Below are positions 1-57,900 of a DNA stretch of 64,000 nucleotides, piece after piece (the stretch's first letter is position 1; every line of letters starts with the position of its first letter). The translations under genes and the position numbers were made by a program. Below the pieces are notes generated by a model. That model did not search any database and was not told where the DNA came from. It worked only from the letters and a program-made list of their open reading frames with translations. Source of the DNA: Paragordius varius (lineage: Eukaryota > Animalia > Nematomorpha); contig OZ176050.1 of the NCBI GenBank assembly GCA_964247055.1, positions 6,882,001 through 6,946,000 of the forward strand, given 5' to 3'.

Positions 1-219
1 TGATATTAAGTTTATAGTATAATAACATTTTATTATAAAGTTATACTTAATTTTCTCTCGATTTTCTCTTGTTTTTGAAAAATTGAAAAACCTATAAAAT
101 TTCAAAATTCTGATTGGCGGGATCAAAATTTTTTTCAAATTCGGTTTTCACTGAAATTAGTCATAATTTAAAAAGTTTGAGTGGTGGTGCTTAAAAATGT
201 CCAAATTTGTCGACTAGTG
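1..219 (+). mobile_element. 3' end of a Chapaev3-like (CMC) DNA transposon, continuing beyond the window start
   Basis: Nearly identical to 21620-21835. It ends in GTCGACTAGTG followed by TAA, a TWA target like the copies at 17028-21835. Confidence 0.85.
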
Positions 220-2949: not shown

Positions 2950-4709
2950 CTAGGTGGCCCTGTCACTCTTCGCTGTGACGTAGTCTCACCGATAATTATT
3001 CTTAATAATTTGCAATAAATAGAGGCGATGGAGGTAAAAATAACAAAAAACATATTTAATAAAAAGAATATCTTTAATTATTTTTACGGATTTTTGCATA
3101 GGCTCAAATATACTCGAAATTGAATATATTTAAACTGTTTTAAAGGAAAGGATGATATCATGCAAATACCCCAAAAATTCTTTAACTGAAATTATTTGGC
3201 TTCTTAAGTTTTTTGAATAGCTTTAAAACCAGGCCATTTTCGTATGGCGTCTCAGTTTTAAACGGGTAGACCCCCATAGACATATATGTAAAAAGCGCTG
3301 AATTCCTTTATAGGCAAATATTTGGAATCATCTTTGATACCATCGTCTCATGGGTTATACGAAAAAATACCTAAACTAAATAATCGTATATGATGGCGTA
3401 TTTTTAGAGCACAAAGCCCCAAATTAGCAGCTAATAAAAAACGCCTGACATTTTTTACCTATTACAGGTAATATTCCAAACTTTCAATGAGCTCATATGG
3501 CATCATAAATTTTCTGTAAATTAGCTCCAAAAACGCAATTTCTATATAGTGGCGCAGTTTGGCGGGTACCTCCTAACCCAGAGGGGCTAAACAAAAAACG
3601 CTCGATTAAATTTTAGCCTTAACTCGGGTAATATCTGGAATCATGATTAATTCCATATGCTCTCGTGGGATTTTCGAAAAATTGCCTCAAAGCCAAAAAG
3701 TCATCCTGTGGTGGCGCATTTTTCAAGGCCTAATCAAGGGGTATTTCAATAAAACCGCTTTATTTATATTGTTGCCTTTTTCGGGTAATATTTCAAGCCC
3801 TTATTAAACTCATATGGTCTGATAAGTTTTCTAAAATTTTCCTCCAAAGTCACGCTGTATCGATATGGTGGGGCAGTTGTTGGCAGGCAGCTTCCTACCC
3901 AGAGGCCAATATAAAAAAGACGTTTAATAAAAATTTTCGCCTTTAGAGGGGAATACCTAGAATCATCATTCATTCGATATGTTTATAATAGTTTTTGGAA
4001 GAATGGCTTCTAAACTAAATAATTGTTTAGTGATAGCGCATTTGGGGCGTAAAGGACCTGATCAACGGCTAATTTAAAAAAACTGCACGACTTAATTTTT
4101 GCCTTGTTGCGGATAATATTAGCACCTATTGAACTCATATGGCCTGATAGGTTTTCTAGAATTTAGCCTCAAAGGCACGCTATTTCGATATGACGGGGCA
4201 GTTTTTAGCGGGTATCTCCTTACCCAGCAGCCAATATAAAACGCGCCACTAAAATTTTTGCCTTTTAACATAGAATACCTGGAATCCTCATTGAATTTTT
4301 ACCATCTCATACCCTAGGCGAAAAATAGATTCAAAAATTATTTTTGTGGACTTAATTTTTTTGAAAAAAATGGCATTTTACAAGGGAAGCGGGTAGGGCC
4401 TAGATTAAAAAGGCGAGCCGACTTTGTTCGGCGCAATCAAAAATAAGTAAAAAAAATCATATTTGAAATCGGATTCAACACGTTTTCCGGAAAATTGTCT
4501 TAAAACGATTTTTATGGATTTGTGTTTTCAAAAAAAACGTTTTACCCGGGGTGGGCCTGAACTGGAGGCCTAATTCAAAAGAATGGCGAAACTATTGTCG
4601 GCGTATTCCTTATTTACTATATTTATCGACATTTGGATTTGAATGGGTCTACCGGTTATCCGGAAGCAGATCACAAAGCCAGCATTTTCCATTTTTTTAA
4701 ATATATAGA
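2950..4709 (-). mobile_element. non-autonomous Helitron with type-B 3' end and an internal array of about 160-bp repeats
   Basis: The minus strand starts A|TC at 4709 and ends with hairpin GTCAC-n8-GTGAC then GGGCCACCTAG|T at 2950. It is inserted between A and T with no TSD. Confidence 0.8.
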
Positions 4710-5256
4710 TTACAATGCACAAGTGTAGATTTTAACTTAGTTATATTTTACTGAATGTGGTAATTTAAAATGACACTAGCCGTCAGCACGCATTAACTAT
4801 CAAGTCAAGGGTTCAGCTGACGAACGCCAGTACCCCTATAGTGTCCCCTACCTCTACAAAGCCGAAGAAGAATCAACCATAAGATAATATCTAGTTTATA
4901 AGAATTACATACGTATATATATAAGTTGTAAGAAGCTAATCTATAGTCCGGTTGAGACCTTAATGTTTCGCGTGACCAGGCCAAACATGGTATTGAAAAT
5001 CATATTGCGCGTTATATTGCAAAATAGAGCAAAAATTAAATAATAAGTTTGCAAGATGGTGTTTTATAGTGTTTTTAGCTATTTATAGTTTAGATATTAT
5101 AACGAAGCCTTCTTATAAATGTAATCGTCAAATTCGATTCGATTGCTTTCGGAATAGAATGATATTTAACGTGCTATGGCCGGTTTTTTCCTGAAACCCC
5201 TAGCAAAATCAATCCCTCTTTCTAATATAATTAATAGGGTAAAAGTACATAGCTAG

Positions 5257-6240
5257 TTTTTCATTTATTGTTATAAAAAAACATATTATTGGCTAGTAGC
5301 AAACAAAAGCAAACAATACCTCTAAGCAAGGGGTGTCCAACACAAATAAAAAAACGGTGGCCGCATACGAAATATATAATTCACAAATAATTTATTTTTC
5401 AAACATAAAACTGTAAAATGCAAACACAAAAAAAGCCTTTTTTTCATTTATTGTTATAACTAGCGTAAATCTCGTGCTGCTACGCAGCCCGAGGAAGTCC
5501 TTCGGACTTCTGGGGGGGGGAGGGGGTTATTTGAAAAAAAAAGGACAATAAAATGATCTACATATGTGGATTATTTCGAAACATTATTTAATAGCTATGA
5601 TCTCATAGAAATCTTAAAACGGTGCATTCATGCTAATTTATTGTTTACTTGGGGGAAAAATAGATTTAAAAAATAATTTTTGTGGACTTTGTTTTTTGAA
5701 AAAGGTGGCATTTTACGGGGGGAGCGGATAAAGAGGGCCTAATTCAAAAAAGTGACTCGACTATGTTTGGCGCAATCGAAAATAACTAAATAAAAATCAT
5801 ATTTGAAATTGAATGGTCCAACACGTTCTCCAAAAAATTGTCTCAAAGACACGATTTTTGTGGACTTCTGTTTTCAAAAAAAACCCGTTTTTCACACGGG
5901 GTGGGCCCGAACTGGGGGCCTATTTCAAAAAAAGGGCGAAGCTATTGTCGGGGCATTCATTAATGATTATATTTTTTCGATGTTAGGATTTGAATGGGTC
6001 TACCGGTTTTCCTGTACCAGATCACAAAGCCAGCATTTTCCATTTTTATAAATATATAGATAAAAAAATCATATTATTGGCTAGTAGCAAACAAAAGCAA
6101 ACAATACTTCTAAGCAGGGGGTGTCCAACACAAATAAAAAAACGGTGGCCGCATACGAAATATATATGGTCATTCACAAATAATTTATTAGATTTCAAAC
6201 ATAAAACTATAAAATGCAAACACAATAAAAGCCTTTTTTT
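5257..6240 (+). repeat. about 180-bp tandem duplication, second copy interrupted by a Helitron
   Basis: 5257-5437 is repeated as 5438-5459 plus 6061-6240 (TTTTTCATTTATTGTTATAA...GGCTAGTAGCAAACAAAAGC...AAAAGCC). Confidence 0.85.
5460..6060 (-). mobile_element. short non-autonomous Helitron with type-A 3' end
   Basis: 5' TC at 6060. The 3' end has hairpins GAAGTCC-GAA-GGACTTC and GCTGC-GTA-GCAGC, then TTTACGCTAG|T at 5460. A|T insertion site. Confidence 0.9.
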
Positions 6241-7870: not shown

Positions 7871-10758
7871 ATGGTGCATCCTGCTCTTGTCACTTATATC
7901 ATTCTCTTGCAGACGCTTTTTATCGTGGACCGTATTGTGGTGGGAGACATTACAAAAACCATCTCAACTACCTTGCCCAAAAGGTGTCCATTAGCTGAAA
8001 CTTTAAATGGGTGTCAATGTCACATGTCAGATAATTGTATAAATTATAATCAGAGTCAATGCTTATTGCTACATTGTATGCGTTTACAGAGTGAATCACA
8101 ATTATCGGAGAGATTAATACCATTAAAACGGTTATCATCATCTTATCCCATAGACTTGATTGTTAGCTCTTCACAATTACAAAATTTGGGGAACGATTTT
8201 GGTAACAGCCAAAACGTAGATGGCTCTAGTTGGCGCGATCTTAATATAGTAGGCCTTCGTATTTATCACAATAATATATCCAACATGTCGGAATCGGCTT
8301 TCAAAAGTTTAAACAAATTGTATCATTTTTCTTTGATGGAAAATGCTGCCGGTGATGATATGCGACAAGTAGATTTTAAACGTTTAATGCGCGCTCTACA
8401 TCATTTGCCCCATCTTCAAGATATTTTTGTGTCCGTTTACAGGATTGAAGAATTAGATTTCAACGTTTTTAAACCTTTTTCGGGTCTCAAAGCACTCTCT
8501 ATCATAACGCAAAATTTGGGAACGGTGATCGGGCCCAATTCGTTCGAATTCATTAACCTTAGAAGTTTTATGTTTCATACTGATATTGAACATTTTCCCA
8601 ATTACATAGTTTGGCGTATGCCGGCATTAGAAGAAATAGTTTTCATCTCAAAACATTACTCATTAATACATCAAATGGATTTTGCTACACTCTCCTTACC
8701 TAAGTTAAAACAATTGACTATAACATTCACAGCCGTTGAATCTGTTGATAATGCTTCTTTTGCCTCTTTGTATACGCTAAAAACTTTGGTCTTAAGTCAA
8801 AATCAAATTAATAAAATGTCTTCCAGTAGTTTTAAGAATTTAACGAATCTACAAGAATTAGATCTTTCATACAACAAACTGACACATCTATCTAACAATA
8901 TCTTTGCACCACTTAAATCATTACAAAAATTGGTGTTGTCCAATAACCAACTGGGTCCTTTCCTCGATTTTAGTTTATTTAATTCATTTAAAACGACACT
9001 CAATGCTTTGGTCGTCTCGCACAATATCTTACTGGAGTTTCCTATGTTGAGGATGCCGAATGAATTCTTTACAAATTTAACTAAGATAGATGTATCATAT
9101 AACCACATAACTCATTTACCCAAATTTGATGTGGATGCTGTGGTAAAATTGGCAAAAGATTGCAAGGTGACAGAATTAAATTTGGCTCATAACAATTTAG
9201 ATGCTGTACCCCCAAGCTTTTTGGAAGTGTTTGCTCCGAAACTTGAGACATTGGATTTATCAAACAATGAGATCAAGGCTTTTGATTTCAAATACTTGAG
9301 GGATAGTGAAAATCTTCATATAATTGACATATCCAAAAATCATATAAAAAGTTTGAGTGGTATAGATTGGCTTATGGAGCTTGGCGAACAACTACAATAT
9401 GTTGGATTGAGCGGTTAGTCTATTGTCTTTTAATTAATGTCACAAATTTGGAGTAGTTATCTAAAAATAGTTGTCTTACGTTTAACTAATTAAATCAATT
9501 CAACTATAAGTTTTTGCGTTTACCTTAAATACGGAAAAACTTAAAATCCGGTATTTCCCTAATTCAAATATAAAACTACAATTATTTTAACCCTATAAAC
9601 CGGTTTCGGTTTCTTTTCAAATCTCACGACCCATATGTTTCTTTTTTGCTCGAAGCTATTTATATATTTGCATATTTTATAAAATAGGGAATCCTTATGT
9701 ATGTGATTGTAACATGGCCATGTTTATGAATTGGTATGCCGATTGGTACATAAAACTACCAGAGGATTTACAACGTCGACAAAATGCTGACTGGGAAAAA
9801 ATGTCCTGTAAAATAATTCGCATGGAAAATAATCAACCAGACATTGCCACCACTTTGAGTATTATGTCTATAGACGAAAATCAAAAGCGAAAATTTTGTA
9901 ATAAAATTCCAAAGCTACCTGCAAATACCCTTTTCTCAAAATCGAATGATGAATATAATTTTAATCCATTGGACAATTCAAATGATAACAACAAAGCCTG
10001 GGAAAACGCTGATAATTCGTTAAATGCCATAAATAAAAACTTTTTACGTGGAAGCACAAATGATTTTAATCTTCTTTTGAGATTAATCCATTGGATACTT
10101 ATATTGTTGGGAACACTGTTTGCTTTTATGGTTAGTATTTGTTTTTTAAAAACTACTGGCGAAACGTTTTATTATTTTTTAGTTTTTAAACAAAATTGCC
10201 TATGAATTTTAGTATTAATTCATGTCCCTTTTATTAAACAAGTTTGTATACATTGCTAGTTTTTCATTAATTATTTGCAGATATCATATAAATTAAAGGG
10301 TAATGTAACTGGCCTATAGTTTTTTTCGCTTTTTACTGCTATTCGCCAATAAATATGCTCTTGGTTGCATATACTATATGGCAAATTTAATAAAAAAATC
10401 TAGCAATGTATTGTTACTCATACTGTAATATATGCACATTTTCAGATATATAGAATTTCAATATCTCAAATTTATTTAGGTACTAATCATAATCATGCTT
10501 ATATTTAAACGGTATGATATATGGCCACTTGGTTCAAAACTCAAGCAAGCCCAACATGTTTTCCCTAATGGTGGATCTATGCCAGGGTTTTTGAGATTTA
10601 ACAATCACTCCGGCATAGGTATTCAAAATAAATTCCGTATGTTTCAAGATGTTGGATCACAATCTAATACGGAAGATAAATTAGCCATAACTAGAATGGA
10701 AATTGTTCCTGATTCGGTATCCTCTTCCATAACGCCTAGCCCCCCTTCCTCCAAATAG
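7871..10758 (+). CDS. leucine-rich repeat single-pass membrane protein (signal peptide, LRRNT, LRRs, LRRCT, TM, about 80-aa tail, no TIR), 754 aa
   Basis: Exons 7871-9413, 9688-10130 and 10480-10758 total 2265 nt in frame. Splicing creates the LRRCT start LSG|NPYVCDC and a continuous TM helix ILILLGTLFAFM|VLIIIMLIF. LxxLxLxxNxL repeats are present, and both donors are GTTAGT. Confidence 0.9.
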
Positions 10759-11450: not shown

Positions 11451-12038
11451 ATGTTATATAAGTAAGTACAAAGTTGAAATGGTTTAATACATTTCTCAAC
11501 TACCCCAATTCATAAATAATAGAGATTATTTGTATTCGTGTAAAAGGTAGATTTCAGAATAGCGGAAGTATTAACATTAGTAATATTTACCTTCTGTCTT
11601 TTCCAAGTTTATTACAATTTGCTAATGTGCATAATTTATTGAATAATTTTTGATGATATTAAGTACGGAAAATAACATAGAAAGTATGACCCATTTTGCA
11701 TTATTAAGTACCATATTCTCAATATGCAATGGCTGTGCAATTATACAGATTGCCGGGTTATCAAATCCTTTCTAATATTATCCCAATATTTAATCATCAT
11801 GTATTTTATTGGAAAATTTTGCTAGCTACTCATACTTTTTAAATTTTTTTTAAATTTTTTATCAAATATCTTAGGTATTGATATTAAATGAAATGGTCCG
11901 GGATTGTTTTTAAATATTAAAGGAGTATTTCCAGGGGCTATTTAATAAAAATATCATAGTAATTTTTTAAAATATAATTGCTTATCGAATTTTTGCTTTA
12001 TTTAACTTCTAATATTTAGCATACACGGTTGACTATTA

Positions 12039-13106
12039 TCAGGTGTCATATATCATCACCGGTTTAACTAGTAGAACACGTAAGCCAGTACGCAGACGAT
12101 TAATTTGATACAGACTTAATTTTGTTCCTCTTACATTAATCTAACCCACAAGTTGACTCCGCCACAAACTAGCGTCTCATTTTCATCATTCAGTAATCAT
12201 GTCATATTTTCTGCCTGAAAAAGAACATTTGCTGCATGTATTGTTTTTTTATATTATTAGAAGAAAGGGGTATTGAAAGTGATAGATGTAAAACCATGTG
12301 GCGTACAATCACGAACCGTGAAGTGGTTTCAATTTAAAAATTATTTCAATGTGAAAGGCAATGGGCGCTGGGGTAGACCACACAGCTGCGAACGATAAAG
12401 TGCAAGTATTGGATGATGACACAACTCAACGCTAGTAGAATGACAGGTATAAAAAAACAATCAGCAGGTCTGCGGCACTGGGAAAGATTAGTTGAATCGG
12501 TAAATGGGCCGCACGCTATAATGCACAATCCAAAATCAAAAGGAAATCATTTTTGTTTGTAAATCCAGAGCGGAAATAATCTTGGATTTTATTGCGGGGT
12601 AAACCACACTCTTTGCTGATGGGACAGGAACGGAAGTATCTATTATAAACGTTTAAAACCCTGTGAAACTGTTCATACATTACGCTATCACCAATAAATG
12701 AAAAATATAAATCATGCATTAATCAAAAAACGACCGAAATAGGCATAAAGACTTGGCAAAAGGAGTGCATGACAATTCTCCCTCTCGCACAGCGATACCA
12801 GGGAAGATTGAAATTGTTGTGATGAATTCTTCCCATCCACTCTACTCTCCGGACATGACGCCATCTGACTAATACATCTTCGCATCAATACTTTTTACCC
12901 TCGAAGGGCAGCACTTCAATAACTTCAAATACTTAGGGGAAAGCTTGATGAAAGGGTTTTACAAAAATCAGTTCTTCTGGCACAGCATTTATACTTTACT
13001 GAGAGATGGGCAAAATGTGTAGAAGCCGATAGACCATAGTAAAAAATAATTACTAATATTCCTTCTTTTTTACTAAAAAACAGTGAAAATTTATCACTAC
13101 ACCTGA
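12039..13106 (+). mobile_element. decayed Mos1-like mariner transposon
   Basis: TIRs TCAGGTGT and ACACCTGA, with TA on the left. The broken translation gives MSYFLPEKEHL, WFQFK, GRWGRP, GKWAAR, WDRNGSIYYKRLKPCETV, HDN, HPLYSPDMTPSD and ERWAKCV, collinear with Mos1 transposase. Many stops and frameshifts. Confidence 0.9.
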
Positions 13107-14930: not shown

Positions 14931-17900
14931 TAATGTTTTTTAAAATAAATTTTTAGTCATTTTTTAGTTTTTATGGGATTAATTTGTACTTTATATTCGT
15001 TATTTACAACTATATTTTTTTTAATGTTTATGCATCATCTAAAAAATTTGACACACACACACACACACTTCTTAACATAACTTGTCATTTAATGATTAAT
15101 TAAATTTTTTTTAATTAACTGTATTACTTAACTCAATTTAAATATGACAACATTTTAATCAATAAATTCATTCAAACTGCGCTGCTCTATTACATAAGAC
15201 TTACTCATTAAATAATTAATCAATAAACGTTATATATGTTAATTAATATATAACTAAACCAACTTTGGCAATTATTAAGCATCTAAATTTTTTACTTAGA
15301 TGCAAAATATAGGATGGACATATTTCGACTTAAAGATTACCCTATGGGCAAATTTGATTTTATAAAAACATTTTTATTTATCCCAGAGGCTTTAATTTGT
15401 AATACTAGATTTTCGAAAATATAATTATCAAACATTGTATTTATATATTAGCGAAAAAACTTAAATTTTTACAATTCTATGTCGTTTACAGAGGGGTGTC
15501 CAACTCAACGAAAAATTTGAAAAAATATAAAATTAAATTTAAATTCTATAATATGCAAAAATTTTCATATGTAGCAAAATCAATATCATTTTTCACTTCA
15601 AAATATTATTTAAATCCATTCCCTTAATTTGCTCATAAATTTATTTTTATTGATTAAACATTGATTGTTCGTAACGGGTTAATTAATTTAAACAGTTAAA
15701 TATTTATATATATTACATTTCATCCTTTAATCACGGTTTTTTTGGGGTCAAAAATAATTTATATTTTTTTATTCGACCCTTGTAGCCATTTTTGTTGGGC
15801 CCTCCCAGTTTACAGTCTGAAATTTGGCTCTTACATTTAATTGATATGAACAGACGATTTAATATATTACCGAAAATAAGCTGTCATATAAATTAATCAT
15901 TTAAGTTAATTAGTTTGTCAGATTTTAAGCGATTTAGTTAACAACACTTATTCTGGCAAAACGTTTGCCTTAATTTTATATTTATTGGAAATGTGACCAA
16001 AACCCTATAGAATGTATTTTTCATATTTCACCCATTATCTTATATATTTTTAAGATATTTAATTTGGTTATACATTAACCCAAGGTTATGAGGTGTTAAA
16101 GCCTATCATTGTCTTTAATTATTACATTGCTAAAAAATATTGTCTTTTTAATACAAATGTGTTTTAAAATCAATCTATAAATCCAAAATAATTTTTTAAT
16201 AGAAATGTCTGACAATCACAACAATGAACACATCGTACATACTGATGGGGGACGCTATGACGTTGATTTAGAAAGTATGCTTAGAACACCTGTATATTGG
16301 GCTGAACCGGAAAATGTTTATAGGGTTAAGCGATGTACATGGTATTACATTGATCAATATAATGGACGATACGTTCCCTACAATCAAGAAATTTCTGAAA
16401 GATTAGAGGTATTTACAATTTATAGTAATAAATTTCAAAATTGTTAAAACCACTTTAATAAATGCCTTGTTTTTTTTATTAAAAAGAATGTTTTTAGCCA
16501 TCTTTTTGTGATATATGCAGATCGCTACCATATTATTAATATTGTTAGTAACACAAAGTGGCACTAAAATCCATTTTAACACCTCTTTTGGAACGCAACA
16601 TCCAGGTGCTAAAAATTTGCACTTTTATTAACGTAATAAAATTCATACACCATTATACTCATTTATTAATGAAATTTTAGTAAATTTACTTTTTTCATTC
16701 AATAATAAAATAAATATTAAACCATTTTTTTGAAGCACCCGAAAATTTTGCAAACAAATTTTTTTCTTAATAGAATGAATATCGCAAGGGTATCATGTCG
16801 GATGATTGGAACCGCAAAATAGTTATTTCATCAAATGAAATGTACATTTTGTATGATGCGCAACACATTTCACACATTGTCTCTAATCCACGTAGGGATG
16901 AATGGGGTGGATCCTTGATTTTTGTATGTTTTATATTGATTTATATTTTTTATACCAATTCAATTTCCATTTCTAAGATTTTACATATATATATTCATTA
17001 TAAAATTGATATTTATTTAATTTATTACACTGCTCAACAAGGTTTTGCACCACCCCATTTTTTTCATTTTCTGATACCTAATGGCATGGAACGGCCAAAA
17101 CAAAAAAATAGAGGTTACCAATAGGATTTTTCCAAAATTTAATTTTTAAATTTGTTTTTAATTTGAAAATAACAATCATTCTACGTGTACATATGTTTGA
17201 ATATTCAAACGAGCAAGTCGATACAAGTAATATTCCAGAGCCAGGTATTTTCATTATAATTTTAGCACGAAAATGCAAAAATGATACAAATAAATTTTGC
17301 ATCTGTTGTGGTAAATATATATTTAAGAAAAATAACTTGCGGAATATCGATGTTAATACTGGAAAACTTTTTACAAAATATTTTGATACTAAAATTGATA
17401 ACACTAGTCGACAAATTTGGACATTTTTGAGCTCTACCACTCAAAATATTGAATTATGACTAATTTCAGTGTTTTAAAACCGAATCTGGAAAAATTTTTG
17501 ATCCCACCAATCAGAATTTTGAGATATTATAGGTTCAATTTTTCAAAACAAGAGAAAATCGAGAGAAAATTAAATATAACTTTATAATAAAATGTTATTA
17601 TATTATAAAATTAATATCATTATAAAGCTTTCTAAACTCTATCTTTTGAATATAAATATGTCATTTAAATATCAGGGTGAAAAAAATAGTACGGATATAA
17701 ACGTCAAAATTGAATTTTTTTTTAAGTTAATTTTAAACATGTAAAAATTTATATTTAAAAAATACTAAAAGAGGCATTCTATGATTTAAACCTTCGGCTT
17801 TCAGATAGGCTATATTTATTTTGTTAGTTTTCGTTATTTCGAGTACTTAATAGGGTTTTTCTTTTCGCTTGATTCTTACAAAAAATCCTTTATTTATACC

Positions 17901-20900
17901 TAGTGTATATTATTTATTTTTTAATATCATTGGTTGGTCTGTATTTTGAATTCTAGATGGATGTTGTGTAACCACTTTTAGTAGAATTCACTCTTATGGG
18001 ATTGGACCATTTGTATTTACCTAATCTTTTTATTCGATTTAATTGTATAATTTATCTAACTTGATTCTGTGAATTGGTTAATTTGACATGTCAATTTGCC
18101 TGGATTTTGCTTGCAGATCTCTCTTATCGGGCTTTACGACTCCTTGTTATCTTTGCCATATCTGTCATTATTATAGGATCGCTTGGGGGATATGCAGAGC
18201 TTCTGCGTGCAGCCGCCCGGATCTATCACACTATACATAAGCCCTTTTAGATTTTTATATTTTGGCTCTTAGCTTGTTTAGTATCTTATTTAATGCCTAG
18301 AATTTTGTTATTCATGCAAATAATTTTTTTGTGCAAATTTTATTGTTGATTATAGTCTATATATCCATTTACTCGTATATCTTTGTAGGTACTTCCACAA
18401 AAAATTGTATAAATACATATTAAAATTATTCTCAATATATTCATATTCTTTTTAACTACAAATTTTTAATTAATATATTCAATAAAATGAATATTTATTT
18501 ATTGTATGTATTTAAAATAATAATTATATAGCATTAAAATTCCAGATAAAATCAGATTTCATGTTAATATTATTTCGGGCGTTGTATCTTGCTTTAAATC
18601 TTTTTATATCCTGGTGCATTCGCCGCCAACTTGATCGGTAATGCTATTGAGCGGGAATCTTTCAATATGTTCATCTATTATGTGTAGCTTCATAGTCATT
18701 TTACAGCCTACATTTTATAAAATAATATACCGATCCGATGATAACTTTCTACAAGCTCCTGAGCTAATATTTTATAATCCTCTAACTTTTGTGTAGATAA
18801 TAAGTTTATAAAAGATTTATCGTGAAATTTTTTTTTGATTAACGGGCCATTAGCAACCCCAGCCTCAGCTTTGGCTTTACTGAGATTATAATGGTTTTGA
18901 AAGAAAATAAATGACGTCGAATCTTTTTCAAGATTCTTTATAAATATTGAGAAAATTCCCAGCAATATACGCAAATGAGGTATGTATATTTTAACAATAT
19001 TGATAAGGGGCTCCATAATCTGATTGAAATTTCCAATATGATAACTTCGAGCACCCCAGCCCTTCTAAACATAATGCTAGTGTCTCATTCTGCTATTCCA
19101 GAGACAGAACAAGCAGTGATATTTAGGGAATCCACCCTGAAGACCTGCCAGCATTAATAAAACCTAGAATATATTTCGGATTTTACTTTAAAATCACCCA
19201 CAACATTCCAACCATGAGTTTTGTAAGATATTTTTTCCACTGTATCTTTAAAAACTTGGTAAGATTCCTTGCATTTTCGGCCATATACAATAACCACTGG
19301 TTTCTTGGCATTAGTTTTATGGAGTAATATCATCTTCAAACTCAGCTTTTAAATATAATATATAATAGTAAAACCAATTTGCTATCCACGAAAAGAGCCC
19401 AATTTTCAGGATTGTAGGAAGTATTAGCTCCTCCATTAATCCTTTTATATCATTGCAGTGGATATTTTTATTAAGTTCCGTAAAAATTTTAGTTTTGATT
19501 GTCTATTTCTACGAGTAACATTCCCGCTTGATATAACGTTTGTCTCATGCAAAAGAGATAATAACCCTTCAGCAGCATTTTTTGGCAGTTTATATTTTTT
19601 AATATAAACATCAACGGCATTTTCAGATAAAGTTTTATTTAATGGATCATCAATAACATTTTCTGTAGAGTCTTCGTCAATAAAAATATCATCTGTGGCA
19701 TCGTATTCTGGGGCTGGTATATTTGGATCATTTGGTACCGGTCTAATAGCGGTAGGTACATACGGGGTAAACAATTGGTTTTTTTATATCGCTTTGCCCG
19801 AAAAGCTTTGAAATTATCAAAAAGACAAAAATGGCACTCTAAAATATATGTTATGGGAACCTTGATCATGATTTGCTAGGATACGCCATATCATGGGTAC
19901 GGAAAATGGCATTATATTTTTATGATTCTTTTAACCGAATGCCAAGAAACCAGTGGTTATTGTATATGGCCGAAAATGCAAGGAATCTTACCAAGTTTTT
20001 AAAGATACACTGTAAAAAATATCCTACAAAACTGATGGTTGAATGTTGTGGGTGATTTTAGTGTAAAATCCGTGATATATTTTAGGTTGTATTAATGCTG
20101 GCAGGTCTTCAGGGTTGATTTCCTAAATATCACTGCTTGTTCTGTCTCTGGAATAGCAGAATGAGACACCAGCATTATGTTAAGAAGGGCTGAGGTGCTT
20201 TAAGTTATGTTATTGGAAATTTCAATCAGATTATGGAGCACCTTATCAATATTGAGAAAATATACATACCACCTTTGCATATATTGCTGAGAATTTTCTC
20301 AATATTTATAAATGATCTTGAAAAAGATTCGGCGTCATTTATTTTCGTTCAAAACCATTATAAACTCAGTAAAGCCAAAGCTGAGGCTGGGGTTGCTAAT
20401 AGCCTAATCAAAAAAATTTTTCACGATAAATCTTTTATAAACTTATTATCTACAAAAGAAAAAAAGCTTTTGAAGCTTTAAAAAAATTCAACACTGGTTT
20501 TTTGGGTATAATATATTTTTAAATATTAGGTTTATAAAAGTCAGAGGATTATAAAATATTAGCTCAGGAGCTTGTAGAAAGTTATCATCGGATGGGTATA
20601 TTATTATATAAAATGTAGGCTGTAAAATGACTATGAAGCTACAAATAATAGATGATTATATTAAAAGATTCCCGCTCTACCGATCAAGTTGAGGAGTGAA
20701 TGCACCAGGATATAAAAAGATTTGAAGCAAGATACAACGCGCGAAACAATATTAACATGATTTCTGATTTTATCTGGAATTTTAATGCTAGAGAATTATT
20801 ATTTTAAATATATACAGTAAATAAATATTCATTTTATTGAATATAATAATTAAAAATTTGTAGTTAAAAAGAAAATGAATATATTGAGAATAATTTTTAT

Positions 20901-23900
20901 ATGTATTTATACAATTTTTTTGGGAAATACCTACAAAGATATCCGAGTAAATAGATATATAGACTATAATCAACACTAAAATTTGGTACAAAAAATTTAT
21001 TTGCATAAATAACAAAATTCTAGGCACTAAATTATAAGATACTAAACAAGCTAAGAGCCAAAGTATAAAAAATCTAAAAGGGCTTACGTATAGTATGATA
21101 GATCCGGGCGGCTGCACAAGCTCTGCATATCCCCCAAGCGATCCTATAATTATGCCAGATATGGCAAAGATAACAATAAGTAATCGTAAAGCCCGATAAG
21201 AGAGACTTGCAAACAAAATCCAGGCAAATTGACATGTCAAATTAACCAATTCACAGAATAAAGTGAGATAAATTCTACAATTAAATCGAATATAAAGATT
21301 AGGTAAATACAAATGGTCCAATCCCATAACAGTGAATTCTACTAAAAGTGGCTACACAACATCCATCTGAATTTCAAAATACAGACCAACCAATGAACGT
21401 TATTAAGTACTCGAATTAACTAAAACTAACAAAATAAATATACCCTATTTAAAAGCTGAAGGTTTAAACCATAGAATGCCTCTTTTAGTATTTTTTAAAT
21501 ATAAATTTGTACATGTTTAAAATTAACTTAAAAAAAAGACTCAATTTTGACGTTTATATCCGTACTATTTTTTTCACTCTGATATTTAAATGACATATTT
21601 ATATTCAAAAGATAGAGTTTAAAACGCTTTATTAAATGATATTAATTTATAATATAATAACATTTTATTATAAAGTTATATTTAATTTTCTCTCGATTTT
21701 CTCTTGTTTTTGAAAAATTGAAAAACCTTAAATATCTCAAAATTCTGATTGGCGGGATCAAAAATTTTTCCAGATTCGGTTTTAAAAAAATTTTAAGTGG
21801 TGGTGCTCAAAAATGTCTAAATTTGTCGACTAGTGTTATTTGATATTATTATGTAAATTAATTGTATGGTTAAAAGAGGATAATATTTAGTAGACAATAA
21901 TACCTTTTTAATAACTTGTTGTTTGGTTAATTTAGTCAAAATGTACCATATTTAAATAATGTTTTAATCAAATTAAAACAATTTAATGTTGTTTAATTAA
22001 TAAATATAAGGATGCCAGACCAAGTAAATTGGTGGTAAAACGAGGTGTTTCAGAATGGGATACAATTCGCAAGGAACCGGACTTGCCTATAGATCATGTC
22101 ATATTTGTCATACATGGGATTGGAGAGTTTTGTGATTTCAAGTTTCGAACCGTTAACCAATGTGGTAAAATTTTGAATTTGATATTTTTAAAATTAATTA
22201 AAGTTCGTTTACCATTTTTAGAGTTTTATTTAAAATGGTGAATACATTTTATAAAAGTCTAAACTTACAAAGCAGCAACTTAAAGATTGACGAGTATTAA
22301 AAAAGTATTTATGCGGCTTTTTAAAATGTCTATTTTACATTTATTTCATAAAGGAATTTTATGCTAAAAAATATCTGCTTTCATAGCCAATATTGCTAGA
22401 ATTCATCTTTATCTGATATATTAATAACATTATGACAGTCGATGGTTGGAGGGAAATGGGTAGTGCCCTACAGAAAACGCATTTCAAACAATACATGGAT
22501 AAAGGGCAAATTGGAAGGGTTGAGTTCATTCCATGTAATTGGCATAAGATATTGCATGGCGAAAGTACGGGTATAGATAGGTACTAAAATTTTTATATCA
22601 TTTTTTATTTAAAAAAATCGTAATAGCTAAATTTCTATTTCTGATGATATTGATATAAATTACGTATTTATCTATTTTTTTGTTATGGTTTTCCAATTAT
22701 ATAATTGTTATTGCATTTTAGTCGTTTGCAATCCATTACATTGTCTAGCATTAAAAAATTGCGTGATTATGCCAATGATACTCTAGTCGATATACTTTTT
22801 TATACAAGTCCTATATATTGTCAGGTATAATTTTTGTTTTAATTATATATATATTATCATTATTATTTTTTTTTATTTTTACTTAATATATTGAAAAAGA
22901 TACTATTATGTATCGAAAATTTTGGGTATAGTTTATATATAATTTTTGATGTTTTAGAACAGGGGTGTCCAATACAACTGGTTTCGAGGGCCACAGTTTT
23001 GGATCAAAAATTTGACAGGCCGCATTCATAAAAAATATGGGAATCAACATATATTTTATTCGATTTTTAACATAAGACTGTAAAAACAACTATTTATTAT
23101 AATAAAATTTGCTAGTTCATTGCCAAAATTCGGAAAGACTTATGCAGAATATTTGTTTAAAATAATCAATTATTTTTAGATTTTTGTTAAATATTATATT
23201 TAAAATTTCGCGCGGGCTGCAGAAATATTTCAGTGGGCTGCGTGTTGGACACCCCTGTTTTAGAAAAATCCGTATTTATCCGTGAATTTATATAATATTT
23301 CAAATAAAAGAAATATTTTTGACCAAAAACAATTACAAATTTATAGTATCAATTAATATTAATGCTATTCTTTCTTAAATCGTCTTTATCTAAACGATTT
23401 AGATTCAACTAAATTGATCATAATCTGTTTTATTCCTTTTATTTTTTTAGACTATCATAGATACCGTGTGCAATGAACTTAATCGATTATATCAACTCTT
23501 TATAGAACGTAATCCAAACTACCAAGGAACAACGTCTATCATTGGGCATAGTCTTGGTAGGTTAAATTGTTTTATACTAACAAATTTTTCTATTTTACTA
23601 TTTTTTCGAATTTAATCTCTTGTTTTATTATTAATTTATTGTTAATCATAATTAATTATGCTTGTAAATAATATTTTAGGTTCATTAATTGCATTTGATC
23701 TTTTGAGTCACCAACGAGCTCAAAAAGAGCAAACTCAGCCGGAAAAGTCGATCGAATCCCCTGAAGATGAAACATTTAACTCATCATCCAAAAATAAATC
23801 AATGGATATCGGTAAATTATTTATTTTAGCAGGGCTTATTGAAAAATAAAAAAATTACATACTATAATACCAGTAGTAGGTATATTGATTCAATAATGAG

Positions 23901-29569: not shown

Positions 29570-30384
29570 TATATAAATACAAATGTTTACATAAACTAAA
29601 ATTAAACATATATGTATTCTACTTTCTAATATATTTTTATTTTTTGTACAATCTCGTCATATCGAGTTATTTTAAACGGGGTTAAACATAATTGTGTCAT
29701 TCACTATACAAAATATTCAAGTGCATTATTATCTATATTTGATATTTGATATAAATATATAATATATTAATAGTAGCAAAAACATTTTTGATATCTATTT
29801 ATTAGATTTGGACACATTTAATGCGCAATATAATCACAATAAATGTATGTATGTAGTAATTTAAATGCGTTTGCACATAACATATGATGTATTTAGTTAG
29901 AGTAGAGGATAAATAAAATTTATTTTACAAATAGACAAAATACCCTGATGTATTATTTCTATCTAAATTATTGTTGTTATTAGATGTGTAATTATAATTT
30001 GAATTATTTTGATGAACCATCTGATTATTGGCTACGTTTTTACAGGCATTCGGCAAAATGGGTCTTGGACCAATTTTACCCTGTGAATAAGTTAAATTTG
30101 GTTCTAATGTATCAACACTGTTTGGTATTGATTCTCTAAAAACAAAATATTTTGAATGAAATTATATATATGAACTAAAATGTTGCATTTTATTGAAAAA
30201 TTTCGTCATTTTATTAGTTACCCTATCATTTGATGTTTATGGATTCCAGAATTATTGGGTGATTTTTTAGACAAAGTTTCAAAAGAATGGTTTTCTTCTC
30301 CATGTCCGCTAGTTTCAAATAGTTCTTTGGGATAGGGTGGCATAGGGATGAAAAAGTCTATATTTAATAAATGGCACATTTAGT

Positions 30385-33300
30385 TTAACAATTCAATTTT
30401 AGTGTTTTACAAGAAGTAATAGTACCTGAATTATACGACATATGTAAGTGATTGGCTAAGTTTGGATCTAAATACCCCATTTTTTCTCCACTAATATTAC
30501 TATTGTTTGGCACATCATCACTTTCGGTTATGAAAGAGGAAAACTGATTATTGTAAGATTCATAATATTTCTTTTGACTAATATTCCTATTTTTTCTTAT
30601 GTTCGAGGAGGTTGATGTATTTATATCAGCAGTCTTATTGGAACTTAGACACGACGATATTTGTGTCCCTGTTCCATCACCACTAATATTTCGATCCTCC
30701 CCCCTGGACCTTGAGGATAGCGTCGAAGACGTATTTTGTTCGTAAGCCGGATTGCATAGGTATTTAAGATCATTTATATTGTGATTCGTATTTTGAGTTT
30801 GGCCATTCACGGCATTCGGTTGAATTGGTATGACATTTTGAAATTGTTCATACATACTGGGTGGATGAATTGAATACATACCATTATCATAGTTTTGTGA
30901 GGCGTTTACACAGCTATCCTCAATCTCATCCTCGTCTGATGTTGTTAAGTAATTACTGGGCCTCCCATTATTGGTGTGCTGTTGACATGTTTCATTATTT
31001 TGAGGGTATTGATTTAATCCGTAACCTTTAGATGCGTTAACATCAGGAAAACATACTTTAATTGAATTTTGCGAATTACATGGTACATTTTGAGGATTTC
31101 TCGCATTTGGGTTATAATTTATGGTTTGTTGTGGCTCTTGGATATGGTATTGTGGATGATTGGTTGTTAGTACTTTAATAACATGTGGCATTCCATTTGG
31201 ATTTGAATGAGGCGCAATCATTGAATTTTGACTTAATGGCATTTGTCTATTTATTTAAACAGTAAGTGATAAATAAATTTAATTTATAATTTACAGCTAT
31301 ATAATTTAAGTCTCAAACAACATAAAAATTACTTTTCGCCTAATGCCTCTAAGTTTCCATTCAAATTGAGTTGATCCGATCCTTTTCCCCCGTCTGTGAG
31401 AAATGTATAAGTTGTAGAATTCAGGTTTGTTTGTGTTTGACCTCGAGAAACCTTGGTGTTTTTTGTCTGATTTTCTTCTTTGTTTGATGTATTTTGTATA
31501 TTATTTAATTTGGAGACATTCGATATTTTTGTTCTATTTTGATTATTTTTACCATTAATATGGCGTTGTTTTGTCGAAAATGATTGACATTTTAACCAAT
31601 CTTTCAGAGTGTTTGTGAATGAAGCCATTGAAAAAGAGCGTTTCGGACACGGGTACAAAGACATTTGTTGAAAATTTTGATGTGGGTTAACCAAAGGTGG
31701 TAAGTTCGGTTCATCGTAAATCACATCAGTTGTATTGGACATATTCACAGTTTTATGTAATAAAACCTGGATTCAAAACAAAAATCGTAAAAAATATAAA
31801 AAATAGCAGATACTTATTATAAATAGAGTCAAAAATAAGCGGAAATACGATTTAAAAAAAAAATAAGGCTATTTGTTATTCAACAAAGTATCTTAAGTAA
31901 ATATACCTGCATATATTGTGCTTCATTCATGGGGTAACAAAGGTTAGGTTTAGCGTTGGAACCGATATTATTAGTGTTGGGAGCATTAAATATTTTTCTC
32001 GACTTTTTTCCATATTTTTCATCCTTGCTCCCAATACAACATGGGAAACATAATTTGAACCATGATGGTTTACTTAACCGATTAGTTTGACCAAAATTAT
32101 CGCAATCTCTTTGCATAAATGTATTACGAGACGTGACCGATTTCAGCGTAAATATAACGAGTATTATAAGGGCCAAGGATAAAATGGGAACCGCTATTAA
32201 AGCGGGACCAGATAAGTGAGCTATCGAGGCAAGTGTTGGTTTTTCGTTAAAAATCGTGGCAGACATAATCGGTTGGATTGAAAATGCAGAATCACCACCA
32301 TTAATTAGGTTTGAAGTAAAACCATTTAGCCCACCACCAAGATTGTTGTGGTAATGAACGTTTGGGGAATTATTATCATAATTTTTGTGACTCATACCAT
32401 TTAAATGTAATAATTCATTTGTTTCATCTAATAAATGAATAAAAAAATAAAATATTGAAAAAGTTCAAAAAAGGATATTTTGGGGTCATTTTAGGGATTT
32501 TTTACACATATACCAAAATCCATAAACCAAAATCATCATAAAAACATCTTACATTGCGTTGGTGTCAAAACGTTGAGATATGAGCCACGGTAATCAAAAC
32601 CAACCGCATTCGTTACCATACATACATAATAACCGGCTTTAGATCTAGTACTTTCCATACTTAGCATGCTAGTATACTTGCCTGAAGGACCAAGCCAAGA
32701 TTTTTTAGTGATGTATTGAGGACCATTTTTAATAACTTCATACCGATGTTTACCCAATTTAAGAATTACGGGTACCTCGGTTTTTATCACCTTTTCATCC
32801 GATTGTACATTTAAATCGTGGCTGTTTTGATCTTTATTGCCATCAATATCATCTGAATTTAGTAAGTAATGGCCTTCAATTTTAACGGAATTCGCATCTC
32901 TTTCCCCAATCTTGTGAAAATAAGGCATAGATTGTTCAATATTTTCAACATTTAAAGATTCTAAGCTAGCACCATCAAAGTAACCACCCATGTTTAAAAG
33001 AGCGTTACTTGCCATTGTCGAAATATCGAGATTGGGTAACCGTTTTAACCACTAAAATAAATGTAATTTGATTATTATATGTGAGAAAACAAAACTTTTT
33101 TGGCTATTTAAAATTATTCGTCCGATTATCTTTTTTGTATTTTAAAAAAATTTACTTGAATATGTGGTTTAAGTTCACTACGGACGTCGCATCTGAATTG
33201 GGCCGATTGCCCTTCCAAAACGCTTTCATTAACAGGGTGTTCCCCAATCAGCTTTGGTCCTCTTATTTGATCTGATTAAATAGAAAAAGTTACATTTATA

Positions 33301-46599: not shown

Positions 46600-48456
46600 A
46601 ATTAGCTATTTAATAGCTATGATCTCATAAGATTTTCAAAACGGTGCATTCATTCTAATATATTGTTTACTGGTGTAAAGGCCCCTGATGGCTAGCGGAA
46701 AAACCGCTATACTAATTTTTACCATTTTATGGGTAATATTTAATGCCTTTATTGAACTCGTATGGCTTTAAAAAGCAAAAAGAATTTATTATAGCAGAGA
46801 GAATTATTATATATCGTGTATAAAATATATTGCAATAGTTTTAAGACAAGGTTGCATTTTTGCATAAGGTTAAATATTACAATATTTAGATGAAAGCATT
46901 CACAACCAAGTTATATATTTGCATAAGGTTTAATATTACAGTATTTAGGTGAAAGCATTCACAACCAAGATAATATACATTTTTAGCATAACAAGGGCAA
47001 AGGGTTATGTACTAAGGTAAGAGAGAAGGATAATATTATATTTTCATAAGTTAACTAATATAAGGTCAATTAAATTAAGTTAACAAAAACAATTAAGTTA
47101 TATAACAGCTTCTTAAGTTTTTTGAAAATTAGCTCCAAAACGCCATTTTTGTATGGCGAGTTTCAAACCGGTAGACCCCTACCCACAGGCATATATGGAA
47201 AAAGCGCTAAGTTAAATTTTTTGCCTTTATAGGGAAAATATTTGGAACCATCTTTGAGACCATCGTCTCAAGGGTTATTCGAAAAAATACCTCAACACTA
47301 AATAATCGTGATGATGGCGTATTTTTAGGGGAAGGCTCCAAATTAACCGCTAATAAAAAAGGCCTGACCTTAATTTTTACCTACTTACGGATAATATTTT
47401 GAATGATCTCATATGGCATAAGTTTTAAATTAGTGTCAAAACAACGCATATCCTATGTGGCACAGTTTTTGGCGGGTAGCTTCTTACCCAGAGGCAGGTA
47501 TAAAAAAGTGTCGGGCAAAATTTTTGTCTTTATATTATCTGGAATTATAATGTCCATATGTTCCTATAAGTTCTTGGAAATATTGCTTCAAAACCAAAAA
47601 ATTGTTCTATGGCGGCGAATTTTTCAGGGCGTAAAACTTTTCTTAGCAGATCATTAAAATAACCCCCTATACTAAAATATTTTTTTTAAGGGTATGAATA
47701 TTTTAGGCCCTTATTAAATTCACATAGTCTCATAAGTTTTCTGAAATTTGGCTCCAAAGGCATGCTATATCGATATAGTGACGCATTGTTACGCGTAGCC
47801 TCCTACTCAGAGCCTATTTAGCCACTAATTTAGAAAATCCGCTCGACTTAAATTTTTGCTTTTTTACGGGTATTATTGTAAGCACCTATTGAACTCATAT
47901 GGCCTGATAGGTTTTCTAAAATTTAGCCCCAAAGGCACGCAATTTCGATATGGCGGGTCAGTTTTTACCGGATATCTGCTAGCAGCTATTATCAAAAAAC
48001 GCTTGACTAAAATTTTTGCCTTTTAACAGGGAATACCTGGAATCCTTATTAAATTTTTACGGTCTCATACTTTGAGCGAAAAATATTTTCAAAAAATATT
48101 TTATGGATTTAGTTTTTTTGAAAAAAATGGCATTTTTGGGGAGCGAGTAAAAAGAGGGCCTAAATTAAAAAAGCGAGCCGACTATGTTCGGCGCAATGGA
48201 AAATAATTAAAAAAATCATATTGAAATCGAATGATTCAACACGTTTTCGGGATAATTGTCTCAAAGACACGATTTTAAAAAAACTTATTTTACACAAGGG
48301 GGCCTGAACTGGGGGACTAATTAAAAAAAGGGCGAAGCTATTGTCGGGGCATTCACTAATGATTATATTTTTTCGATATTTGGACTTGAATGGGTCTACC
48401 GGTTTTACGGAAATAGATCACAAAGCCACCACTTTCCATTTTTATAAATATATAGA
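46600..48456 (-). mobile_element. non-autonomous Helitron, 3'-truncated, with an insertion of about 340 bp
   Basis: TC terminus at 48456. The body is collinear with 3200-4709 and 5580-5650. The AT-rich insert at about 46770-47108 contains a roughly 58-bp direct repeat. Confidence 0.8.
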
Positions 48457-49880: not shown

Positions 49881-50009
49881 TGTTGCAATGTAAAAAAAGT
49901 GTTTTCCACTATCTAAAGGCTTTTATACCGCTTTCATCATGCCTAAAAATAGCAGAAAGGACGCTTTAACAAAATTTTGCTAAACATTAAATTTTTCTAA
50001 AAGTAGGAA

Positions 50010-54955: not shown

Positions 54956-57900
54956 ATGACTAAGGTTTCCTATTATTCAATTAAAACAGTTAGGTTTATT
55001 ACAACGCTTGAATTCTGGAGATATTATTATTGGTGATGGAGGGTTTGTTTTTGCTCTTGAAAAGCGTGGATACGTCAAAGCAGGACCTTGGACCCCAGAA
55101 GTTACTGTGGAACACCCAGAAGCTGTTCGAGAATTACACCGAGAATTTTTGCGAGCTGGTTCTGATGTTATGCAAGCATTGACATTTTATGCCAGTGATG
55201 ACAAATTGGAGAATCGTGGAAACAAAGCTAAAGAATTATATTCGGTATCTTTATTATTTTTAAATTTTTATATTTTTTTAATTATTACTTACATGGTTAA
55301 CATTTTTAAATCTTTCGATCAAATCTATTTTTTGTTAAATTTATTTATTAACATATTTTGGTACGCTAATTTGAATAAGAGTGAAAACCGCAAGGCTATA
55401 TATCTTGTGCTTGTTTGAAAATAATTAATGGCTGGTGTAAAAATTGTATTTGTAAATAGAGTACTTTGAATAAAACAATCTACACAGAAGTTTGTGTAAG
55501 TGTTTATCATTTAACTTAAAATGCGGTTTGAGGCTAAAATAGAGAATTTTTCTAATATTTTTCCAACCAAACTAAAAAACTAAAAATTGAAATAAACCAA
55601 AGACTTATTGCACAAATTTTATGTATATTTGTTAATTATTTGCGCTTTTCCGTATCTAGCCATTAATGGCATGTACATTGACCGTAACAAAAATAAAAAA
55701 AACTGTTATAAAACTATTATCTTTCTTAATGGTTCTATGATCAGGGAAATATGTTTGTTAGGGTGAGGCTATTAACAATAAGGCCTGTGAATTGGCACAA
55801 AGTGTAGCCTCAGAAGGTCATGGAACGCTTTTTGCTGGAGGGATTTGTCAAACCCCTTCATATCTGGACGGTAAGGGAAAGGAAGCTGTTAAAGCCGAAT
55901 TCCGAAAGCAAGTCCAAGTCTTTGTTAAACACAACGTTGACTTTTTGATTTGTGAGGTATAATATCATTGAAATACTACAGTTTTTTTATTTAATATTGC
56001 CAGATCAATTTTGTTTGCTAAAAATCCAAGAAAAAGAATAATATTGTTCTCTTTAAGGTCAATGCTTTAATATATTTTAAGTGTCTAATATTTCTTCCTT
56101 TTATAGAAAAATATAATATAGTTAAAGGCTTAAACTTTCAAAAAGCTTTTCTATAGATCTAATGATTTGGGTATAAGAAATGTGTTTACATATAATTAAC
56201 TAAGGCCAACAACCAGATTTTTCAGGTTTAATGTGTGAAATGTGACATAGCTTATCCTTCATACATATAAATGCACATTTTGTGTAAACTAAAATAAAAA
56301 CAATACGACGTGATAACAATCTGATTTAATATTACATAAGGCATACGCATGAACTTTAAAATGAAATGGAAAATAGAATAAACACTGCGTATGGAATAAA
56401 ATTACCACATTTTATATTGTTAGTTCTGGAAAAAGGGAAAAGAGGGATTGATTTTAATATCATTTACTTATAGTTTATTAGCCTCTGTTTATGCAAGAGA
56501 AAATCTTTTATTACCATTTGCAACTTTGTTTAAGGTGCTTCAAAGAATTATTAGTTAATTAAATTTTATTTTTTAGAGTTTATACTATATACACTTTTTT
56601 GATAAAATCTTTCCTAATAATATGAATATGATTACCATGTAATGTACCTTTAATGAGTATTACACTGCTTAGTTGCAATGTATGTTTGCTTGTATCTGGA
56701 ATTATTTATTTTTTTTCAATTAATTTTTAAATGTAAAATATCGTTCAGTATTTCGAACACATCGAAGAAATTGAATGGGCTATTGAAGTTTGCCGTGAAA
56801 CGAACCTAACTATTGTGGCCACCATGTGTATTGGTCCACATGGAGATATGAGTGGAAAAACGACTGAAGAGTGTGGCGTGCGATTAGCTAAAGCTGGTAA
56901 AATTTGGTTATAACATTTTACGGGCAAATGATGGGAATAAATAATTTAGACGTAAAAATTTTGGTAACAAAAGCTTTTTTTTTATTTTCAACTATGATGC
57001 TGTATTTATTTATGTCCATATAGATTTTAACATAATTTGGCCGAAATTTTAGTACTACTTAAAATTTACAACAACTGAGCTATATAAATAGTTAATATTA
57101 ATTTTTCTTGTATTATCTAAAAGTCATATGCCAAAAGTTGACCCTAAAGTTAGCTAAATACATAAAAGATTTTTTTACTGTGCAGTAAAAAATTTTAGAA
57201 ATAGAAGCCAAGGTGGACTGTACATTGATAAATTGAAGTTTGCTCGTTAAGGCCAGTCAAAAATATGTGTACGGAATATATACTAATTTGTCCATCAATC
57301 ATTTAATATTATATGCGCTTTATATGATAAAAAAATTATACAGCCATAATATACCATTGATCAACTAATAATTCTTTTACTTAAATTAGATTCCTATATG
57401 GGATACATAATATATATCAACCTGTTTTGGTCTGACTTGTATTTATATCTATATAATAATATTTTTCGCATTCGATACTATTGCGCTGATTAAAATAGTT
57501 ATTTTTGAAATGCGTCCTTACAATAATGAATAAACCTAATTTGAATAATGTTTTATATCTAAATTTTTAGACCATTAAATACATGAGACGTAGTTTATGG
57601 TTTGACCTCTCCTATCATTCATTACAGCTTTATTATCTTTTATTTTAATTTGACATCTCATGTCAATATTGTTGAAAAGGGAAATAATAATACAACTTTT
57701 TTTGTTATAAATTTGTGTGATAACCAAATTTTAGTTATGAGTTATATTATTCATCTATCAATCAACTTTGTATAACTTGCAAATTTTAATCCATACACAT
57801 ATGTTATAAGAAATTTGTTAATAAATGTAACCGGTAAAATTAATAATAATTATGTATAGCCGATATCAGTTTTACAAAATATTTGACTCTTTGAATTTGT

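What the first reader, a model, noticed from the sequence alone, without database searches (positions are those of the whole stretch)
17193..20790. Transposase gene built with 21-29 nt micro-introns inside a genome whose other introns are 66 nt or longer
Seen in the sequence: AT-rich GT-AG segments interrupt the Chapaev3-like transposase at 19839-19860 (22 nt), 19346-19374 (29 nt), 19164-19186 (23 nt; same intron at 20063-20085), 18708-18730 (23 nt; same at 20596-20618) and 20506-20529 (24 nt, with an in-frame TAA). There is a weaker 21-nt in-frame candidate at 17245-17265. Removing each one restores the frame and, by my recollection of the Chapaev3 consensus, the exact residue spacing: NHDQ|ECHFC (HxxDCYFC), FVDSKL|LSLK (FIDSSKRSLK), GDFK|VLLMLAGLQ (GDLKVxxLLxGxQ), FLG|xxKSEDY and RMG|CKMTMKL (MGCxMSLK). 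The two 23-nt introns keep their length and GT/AG in both diverged copies. Established knowledge: introns this short are typical of ciliates, microsporidia and dicyemids and are below the usual animal minimum. Inference: either this host has an unrecognised micro-intron splicing class, or the element came horizontally from a lineage with tiny introns and may be poorly spliced here, which would silence it.
Basis: partly seen in the sequence, partly recalled or inferred. Interest (0 to 1): 0.85.

Follow-up and report, generated by a model that had tools for sequence, protein, structure and literature searches.

The report
Dead transposon gene with tiny introns
A broken jumping gene (Chapaev3 type) has its enzyme gene split by five 22-29-base segments that are almost certainly real introns; a host gene in the same stretch has a 25-base one too, so this animal itself seems to splice introns shorter than those of nearly all animals, though no RNA could be examined.

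Summary
All eight GT..AG segments lie at the stated coordinates. At five distinct positions (22, 29, 23, 24, 23 nt) the extra DNA between separately aligned exons equals the proposed intron exactly, and 123 of 123 full-length homologues show no length variation there. Only one GT..AG placement fits each gap (chance about 1e-6 or less). The 21-nt candidate could not be tested. The title's premise is wrong: the host BHMT gene in this window has a 25-nt first intron, one codon from a fish's 441-nt intron. So these are most likely host-class micro-introns, not imported ones. No close donor was found (best match about 43%, long branch, standard code, no microsporidian signal). Four positions are intron-free in 43-70 genomic relatives, suggesting gain; one matches a 70-nt intron in a relative. 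The locus is a dead 4.8-kb palindromic element (TTA duplication; arms 6% apart, pN/pS 0.94), so conservation in both arms proves nothing. Introns under 30 nt are published for myxobolids and Dicyema. The scan reported this before on other DNA of this genome (s1-252878, s1-261301, s1-299045).

The parts
17025..17027 (+). TTA target-site duplication, left copy
   Evidence: matches 21836-21838
17028..17054 (+). Left terminal repeat, begins CAC; like the CACTGG(T/G/A)CAACAAA ends of relatives
17193..17401 (+). 5' coding piece: ATG, N-terminal extension and start of the Chapa zinc finger (profile columns about 4-45), cut off at 17401
17245..17265 (+). Candidate 21-nt intron, in frame, no stop; not testable by homology
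17402..19937 (-). Arm A: inverted 3' part of the element (columns about 70-545 plus 3' region); its right end follows a TAA at 17399-17401; stops, frameshifts, 80-nt deletion
19839..19860 (-). 22-nt intron, phase 1, columns 92/94
19346..19374 (-). 29-nt intron, phase 0, columns 261/262, just after the first catalytic Asp
19164..19186 (-). 23-nt intron, phase 0, columns 314/315, just after the second catalytic Asp
18708..18730 (-). 23-nt intron, phase 1, columns 479/481
19938..21835 (+). Arm B: columns about 273-545, 3' region and right terminal repeat ending GTG; 6% diverged from arm A; broken
20063..20085 (+). 23-nt intron, arm B copy of 19186-19164
20506..20529 (+). 24-nt intron with in-frame TAA, phase 1 in the Gly of FLG (columns 457/459); same position and phase as a 70-nt intron in relative L032; deleted in arm A
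20596..20618 (+). 23-nt intron, arm B copy of 18730-18708
21836..21838 (+). TTA target-site duplication, right copy
16924..22010 (+). Host intron (5087 nt) of a DDHD-type phospholipase gene that holds the element
   Evidence: gene name from my own recognition of its motifs
54965..54989 (+). Host control: 25-nt first intron of BHMT, after ATG ACT AAG

Best explanation
The segments are ordinary U2-type spliceosomal introns of a 21-29-nt class that this host's own spliceosome removes. A Chapaev3 cut-and-paste transposon long resident in this lineage came to carry at least five of them in its transposase gene. Most were probably gained in the lineage, as short AT-rich insertions at G|GT-type sites that a spliceosome accepting bare GT..AG segments can excise; one may be an older intron that shrank. 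Active copies would need all introns cut to make a roughly 560-580-aa DDE transposase. Retention of any of the five would shift the frame or bring a stop. The copy here is a dead palindromic rearrangement. Shown: sequence, exact spacing, host control, absence in relatives, neutral decay. Inferred: splicing itself, the U2 mechanism, intron gain and how it happened.
For: Exact excess and invariant homologue spacing at five junctions; unique GT..AG placement, chance 1e-7 to 4e-6. Host BHMT 25-nt intron gives MTK-LGLLQRL, matching homologue starts such as MTKKGLLERL; a fish has a 441-nt phase-0 intron one codon away. Host donors in the window are also reduced to GTA/GTT. Genomic relatives have zero excess at the four other positions in 43/45, 62/62, 70/72 and 56/62 loci, and none has a 15-35-nt insertion in the conserved blocks. 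L032 has a canonical 70-nt intron at the fifth position. Most Chapaev3 transposases are single-exon (PMC4079192).
Against: Only one host micro-intron in the window, and a farther upstream first exon for BHMT is not excluded. Host identity is weakly tested. The relatives sampled are biased to intron-poor copies (ORF calls; best 80 of 577 loci), so gain is not proven. No intact copy examined.
Confidence: 0.8

Rival explanations
1. The introns are real and host-spliced, but most are old: the family descends from an unsampled intron-rich Chapaev3 branch whose normal introns shrank with the host's, rather than being gained as micro-introns.
For: L032 has a 70-nt intron at the same position and phase as the 24-nt one; a clade of window plus L032 is not rejected (p-AU 0.65); host micro-introns sit at old positions.
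Against: L032 is not the nearest relative by similarity (ranks 34/84, 24/84, 8/79); its intron starts with the same GTAAGC as the next exon, which suggests its own gain at a proto-splice site; the other four positions are empty in all relatives scored.
Confidence: 0.2
2. The element came horizontally from a tiny-intron organism (myxozoan, dicyemid, ciliate, microsporidian) and is poorly spliced here.
For: Chapaev3 elements do move horizontally (PMC4079192); reduced GTa..AG signals resemble myxobolids and Dicyema (PMC13644364).
Against: The host has the same intron class, so no foreign origin is needed; no close relative found; Gln is coded CAG/CAA and the stops differ between arms, so no ciliate code; no GTAAGT donors; at least three copies' ends in one window show the family once moved here.
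Confidence: 0.06
3. The introns are real but far-downstream micro-introns are spliced inefficiently (host ones crowd gene starts), so they throttle transposase output.
For: In this window the only host micro-intron is 9 nt after an ATG and 16 later host introns are 66-5087 nt; a 5' bias of microintrons is published for flukes (PMC6530080) and noted by the scan (s1-257502); microsporidian tiny introns splice poorly (cited in PMC13644364).
Against: The family spread, so full splicing happened often enough; no expression data.
Confidence: 0.12
4. The segments are chance insertions or decay indels in a dead copy.
For: The locus is decayed, and GT..AG pairs of 18-35 nt are common in it (about 75 listed).
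Against: Five independent homology-defined gaps all fit GT..AG (1e-7 to 4e-6); decay indels between the arms (1-8, 22, 70, 80 nt) do not look like this; decayed relatives show no such insertions.
Confidence: 0.02

Closest known systems
Chapaev3 transposons (Transib/CMC group; Merrow, Garfield, Conan of Zhang et al. 2014, PMC4079192)
   Same: CAC..GTG ends, 3-bp TTA duplication, roughly 560-aa transposase with Chapa zinc finger, DDE, C(2)C, LH and H(4)H motifs.
   Different: Known ones have one exon, or two (78 + about 480 aa); this family has at least five introns, all under 30 nt, at other positions; only 35-43% identical to the nearest relatives.
Ultra-short spliceosomal introns of myxobolid myxozoans and Dicyema japonicum (PMC13644364)
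   Same: Length 22-29 nt, signals reduced to GT(a)..AG, AT-rich, validated by positional conservation.
   Different: There they are the main class in compact genomes; here they coexist with 66-5000-nt introns in a transposon-rich genome of another lineage, and occur in a transposase. That paper does not mention nematomorphs.
Flatworm microintrons (peak 37 nt, clustered at 5' ends; PMC6530080)
   Same: Bimodal intron sizes; short class at gene starts, as in BHMT here.
   Different: Here 21-29 nt, and in the transposase they lie up to about 1.5 kb past the start codon.
Inverted-duplication (double-Ds or foldback type) transposon derivatives (own knowledge)
   Same: One left end, two right ends, mirror arms inside one target duplication.
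   Different: Route not established here; a nested insertion followed by deletion fits as well.

Membership tests
Chapaev3 | 5'-CAC ... GTG-3' termini | tested here: met
   CAC at 17028 and 17402, GTG at 21833-21835
Chapaev3 | 3-bp target-site duplication (TWA for Chapaev3 is from my own knowledge; 3-4 bp in PMC4079192) | tested here: met
   TTA at 17025-27 and 21836-38; TAA before the inner end; relatives L015, L017, L036, L068, L085 show TAA/TAA
Chapaev3 | DDE transposase with C(2)C, LH and H(4)H motifs | tested here: met
   FVDS, GDFK, HCLFC, PLH (arm B), HIIDEH (arm A), acidic residue before HQD; some residues decayed in one arm
Chapaev3 | N-terminal Chapa zinc finger without RING | tested here: inconclusive
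   First and last parts present (columns 4-45 and 76-98); columns about 46-69 are missing from this locus
Chapaev3 | Groups with named Repbase Chapaev3 transposases in a tree | not testable with these tools
   All homologues are unnamed; length (555-580 aa) and motifs fit Merrow/Garfield; single-exon tree unresolved
Spliceosomal (U2) intron | GT..AG ends whose removal restores a conserved frame | tested here: met
Spliceosomal (U2) intron | Position shared with a normal intron in a relative | tested here: met
   24-nt intron against L032 70 nt; BHMT 25 nt against fish 441 nt, one codon apart; not met for the other four transposase positions
Spliceosomal (U2) intron | Removed from mRNA | not testable with these tools
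Microsporidian-type tiny intron | Strong GTAAGT donor (own knowledge) | tested here: not met
   0 of 6 distinct donors
Recently horizontally transferred transposon | Near-identical element in a distant species | tested here: not met
   Best exon identity 41-43% against a median nearest-neighbour of 76% among homologues; no exact end in metagenomes; eukaryote genomes are not fully searchable here

The most novel reading that the evidence does not exclude
A third animal lineage splices introns under 30 nt beside kilobase introns, and so permissively that resident DNA transposons gain several such introns de novo along the whole gene. The transposase, with micro-introns up to about 1.5 kb from its start, would show that micro-intron splicing does not need cap proximity, and the introns would lock the element to this host, since other animals should be unable to splice them.
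Probability: 0.45. Interest if true: 0.8.

Novelty: new variant of a known kind. Interest (0 to 1): 0.58.

Why it matters
Introns under 30 nt were long thought absent from animals and are published for only two lineages (PMC13644364). A genome that mixes them with long introns lets the size limit of the spliceosome be studied within one cell. A transposase whose relatives are nearly all intron-free gives a tractable case of intron gain and a test of whether such introns work far from the cap. In practice, standard annotation will call intact transposases and host genes in this lineage broken.

Tried and rejected
As the operators asked, the spliced model was searched exon by exon by reference; the joined search was left out, and scripts scored and treed exons apart, with X at stops and split codons unscored. 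Pfam does not recognise the exon pieces. Viral contigs hold no relative; the element end is absent from metagenomes. The LRR search meant to name the host gave only a 25%-identical Gordionus protein with 90% cover, not the top hit, and its locus shows no synteny: weak support for a hairworm host. The BHMT exon search found no transcript of this species. L003's two ORFs are split by stops, not an intron. Single-exon trees are unresolved. The 179-aa antisense ORF was rejected as a cargo gene. 'Kept in both copies' was rejected as evidence. The papers on nematomorph genomes that I read never mention introns.

Full report
Observation. All eight segments are present with the stated lengths and GT..AG ends. 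One exon piece searched by reference found 127 relatives at 28-47% identity, and one of these retrieved 941 full-length proteins of about 560 aa. I built a profile from 123 full-length homologues and aligned the exon on each side of every junction on its own. The DNA in excess of the profile is 22, 29, 23 and 23 nt at the four arm-A junctions and 24 nt at 20506-20529, each equal to the proposed intron. All 123 homologues have the same number of residues across each junction. With the gap length fixed, one placement of 54-78 reads GT..AG, and it is the proposed one. It scores within 5 bits of the best placement except at the 29-nt intron (10 bits lower). With a background of about 0.002 per placement, five independent junctions give 1e-7 to 4e-6. 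The 21-nt candidate lies upstream of the homologues' start and cannot be tested. The TAA just after the 24-nt intron is a decay change: arm A has CAA there.

Anatomy. The locus is one element, 17028-21835, with CAC and GTG ends and a TTA duplication, inside the 5087-nt intron 16924-22010 of a DDHD-type phospholipase gene. After the left end and about 60 codons, an inverted right end starts at 17402 behind a TAA. Arm A runs to 19937 on the minus strand and arm B from 19938 to the right end. The arms differ by 6.0%, evenly in coding and non-coding DNA, with pN/pS 0.94 and six stop codons in the compared exons. The copy is dead and decays neutrally. Eight splice bases would stay unchanged with probability 0.61, so their presence in both arms is no evidence. 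Relatives have similar ends and TAA duplications, which with the motifs supports Chapaev3.

The host is not different from the element. Of 17 host introns read off exon ends in the window, 16 are 66-5087 nt and one is 25 nt: BHMT 54965-54989. BHMT exon 2 aligns from residue 12 of solved BHMT structures and has no in-frame ATG ahead of it. Removing the 25 nt joins ATG ACT AAG to give MTK-LGLLQRL, matching homologue starts such as MTKKGLLERL. A fish BHMT has a 441-nt phase-0 intron after AAG, one codon away. A more distant first exon is not excluded. Scan notes report the same 22-27-nt class in many host genes and call the host a horsehair worm. These notes led me to look for the host control; they are not independent proof. 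My own evidence for the host is weak: an LRR gene resembles a Gordionus protein along 90% of its length at 25% identity, and the low GC is similar (26.93%).

Origin of the introns. Most Chapaev3 transposases are single-exon; Merrow and Garfield have one intron after about 78 residues (PMC4079192). Moth (L005) and Logan (L007) relatives are intron-free, and a lizard copy (L006) has an intron only after residue 7. In 84 genomic loci, mostly from metagenomes, zero excess was found in 43/45, 62/62, 70/72, 59/61 and 56/62 scorable cases at the five positions; the outliers are 1-nt shifts, large insertions or likely mismatched anchors, and no 15-35-nt insertion occurs in the conserved blocks. One relative, L032, has a canonical 70-nt intron at exactly the position and phase of the 24-nt intron. 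That supports the site as a real intron position, by shared descent or by parallel gain at AG|GT; single-exon trees cannot decide. The family is on a long branch, with 41-43% best identity where other members have a median 76% neighbour. This fits long residence and gives no sign of a donor. The sample is biased towards intron-poor relatives, so gain is likely but not proven.

Mechanism. Most likely (0.8) the host's U2 spliceosome recognises these introns by intron definition with minimal GT..AG signals, as proposed for myxobolids and Dicyema (PMC13644364), and the transposon gained most of them while resident. All five well-supported introns shift the frame or carry a stop if kept, as expected if retention is costly (inference). 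The transposase introns lie about 0.3-1.5 kb past the ATG (estimated from profile columns), whereas the host one is 9 nt from its ATG and all later host introns here are long. Flukes show a similar 5' bias at 37 nt (PMC6530080). The element is therefore a natural test of whether micro-intron splicing depends on position.

Limits. 

Verdict. The host-class reading is supported; the horizontal-transfer reading and the title's contrast are not. Chapaev3 and ultra-short animal introns are both known. Their presence in this lineage beside long introns, and five of them in a normally intron-poor transposase, I found in no paper. The scan has reported the same thing on other DNA of this genome. New variant of a known kind; interest 0.58.

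Noticed in passing
window 54965-54989: 25-nt first intron of host BHMT at a near-conserved position; the other six BHMT introns are 67-3519 nt.
   Followed up: yes
window 17028-21835: Palindromic element with one left and two right ends inside one TTA duplication; the first 72 nt of arm B are identical to arm A (P about 0.01 at 6% divergence), hinting at conversion or template switching near the centre. It could form about 1.8 kb of double-stranded RNA in the host pre-mRNA.
   Followed up: partly
window 1-218: Right end of a third copy of the family (GTG then TAA), about 7% from either arm.
   Followed up: partly
window 20788-21327 (-): 179-aa hydrophobic antisense ORF in the element's 3' region; no Pfam or Atlas support, frameshifted in arm A, pN/pS 0.85; probably not a gene.
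   Followed up: yes
L032 1958-2027: Otherwise intact Chapaev3 from a metagenome contig with one 70-nt intron that begins with the same GTAAGC as the following exon, like an intron gained by duplication of a proto-splice site.
   Followed up: partly
window 52823-54718 and 47159-51456: Two more long inverted-repeat (foldback or MITE-like) structures; a related repeat family has several copies at 220-1200, 3800-6100, 47700-50800 and 60700-61600.
   Followed up: no
window 7871-10758 (+): LRR membrane-protein gene; among the listed hits a Gordionus 'artichoke-like' protein from a tandem cluster aligns along 90% of the first exon (25% identity).
   Followed up: partly
window 30200-35730 (-): Ig-domain receptor gene resembling FGFRL1 (no kinase domain seen in the exons read); named from my own recognition only.
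   Followed up: no
window 12013-13036 (+): Decayed mariner-like transposase remnant (YSPDMTPSD motif) between the LRR and DDHD genes.
   Followed up: no
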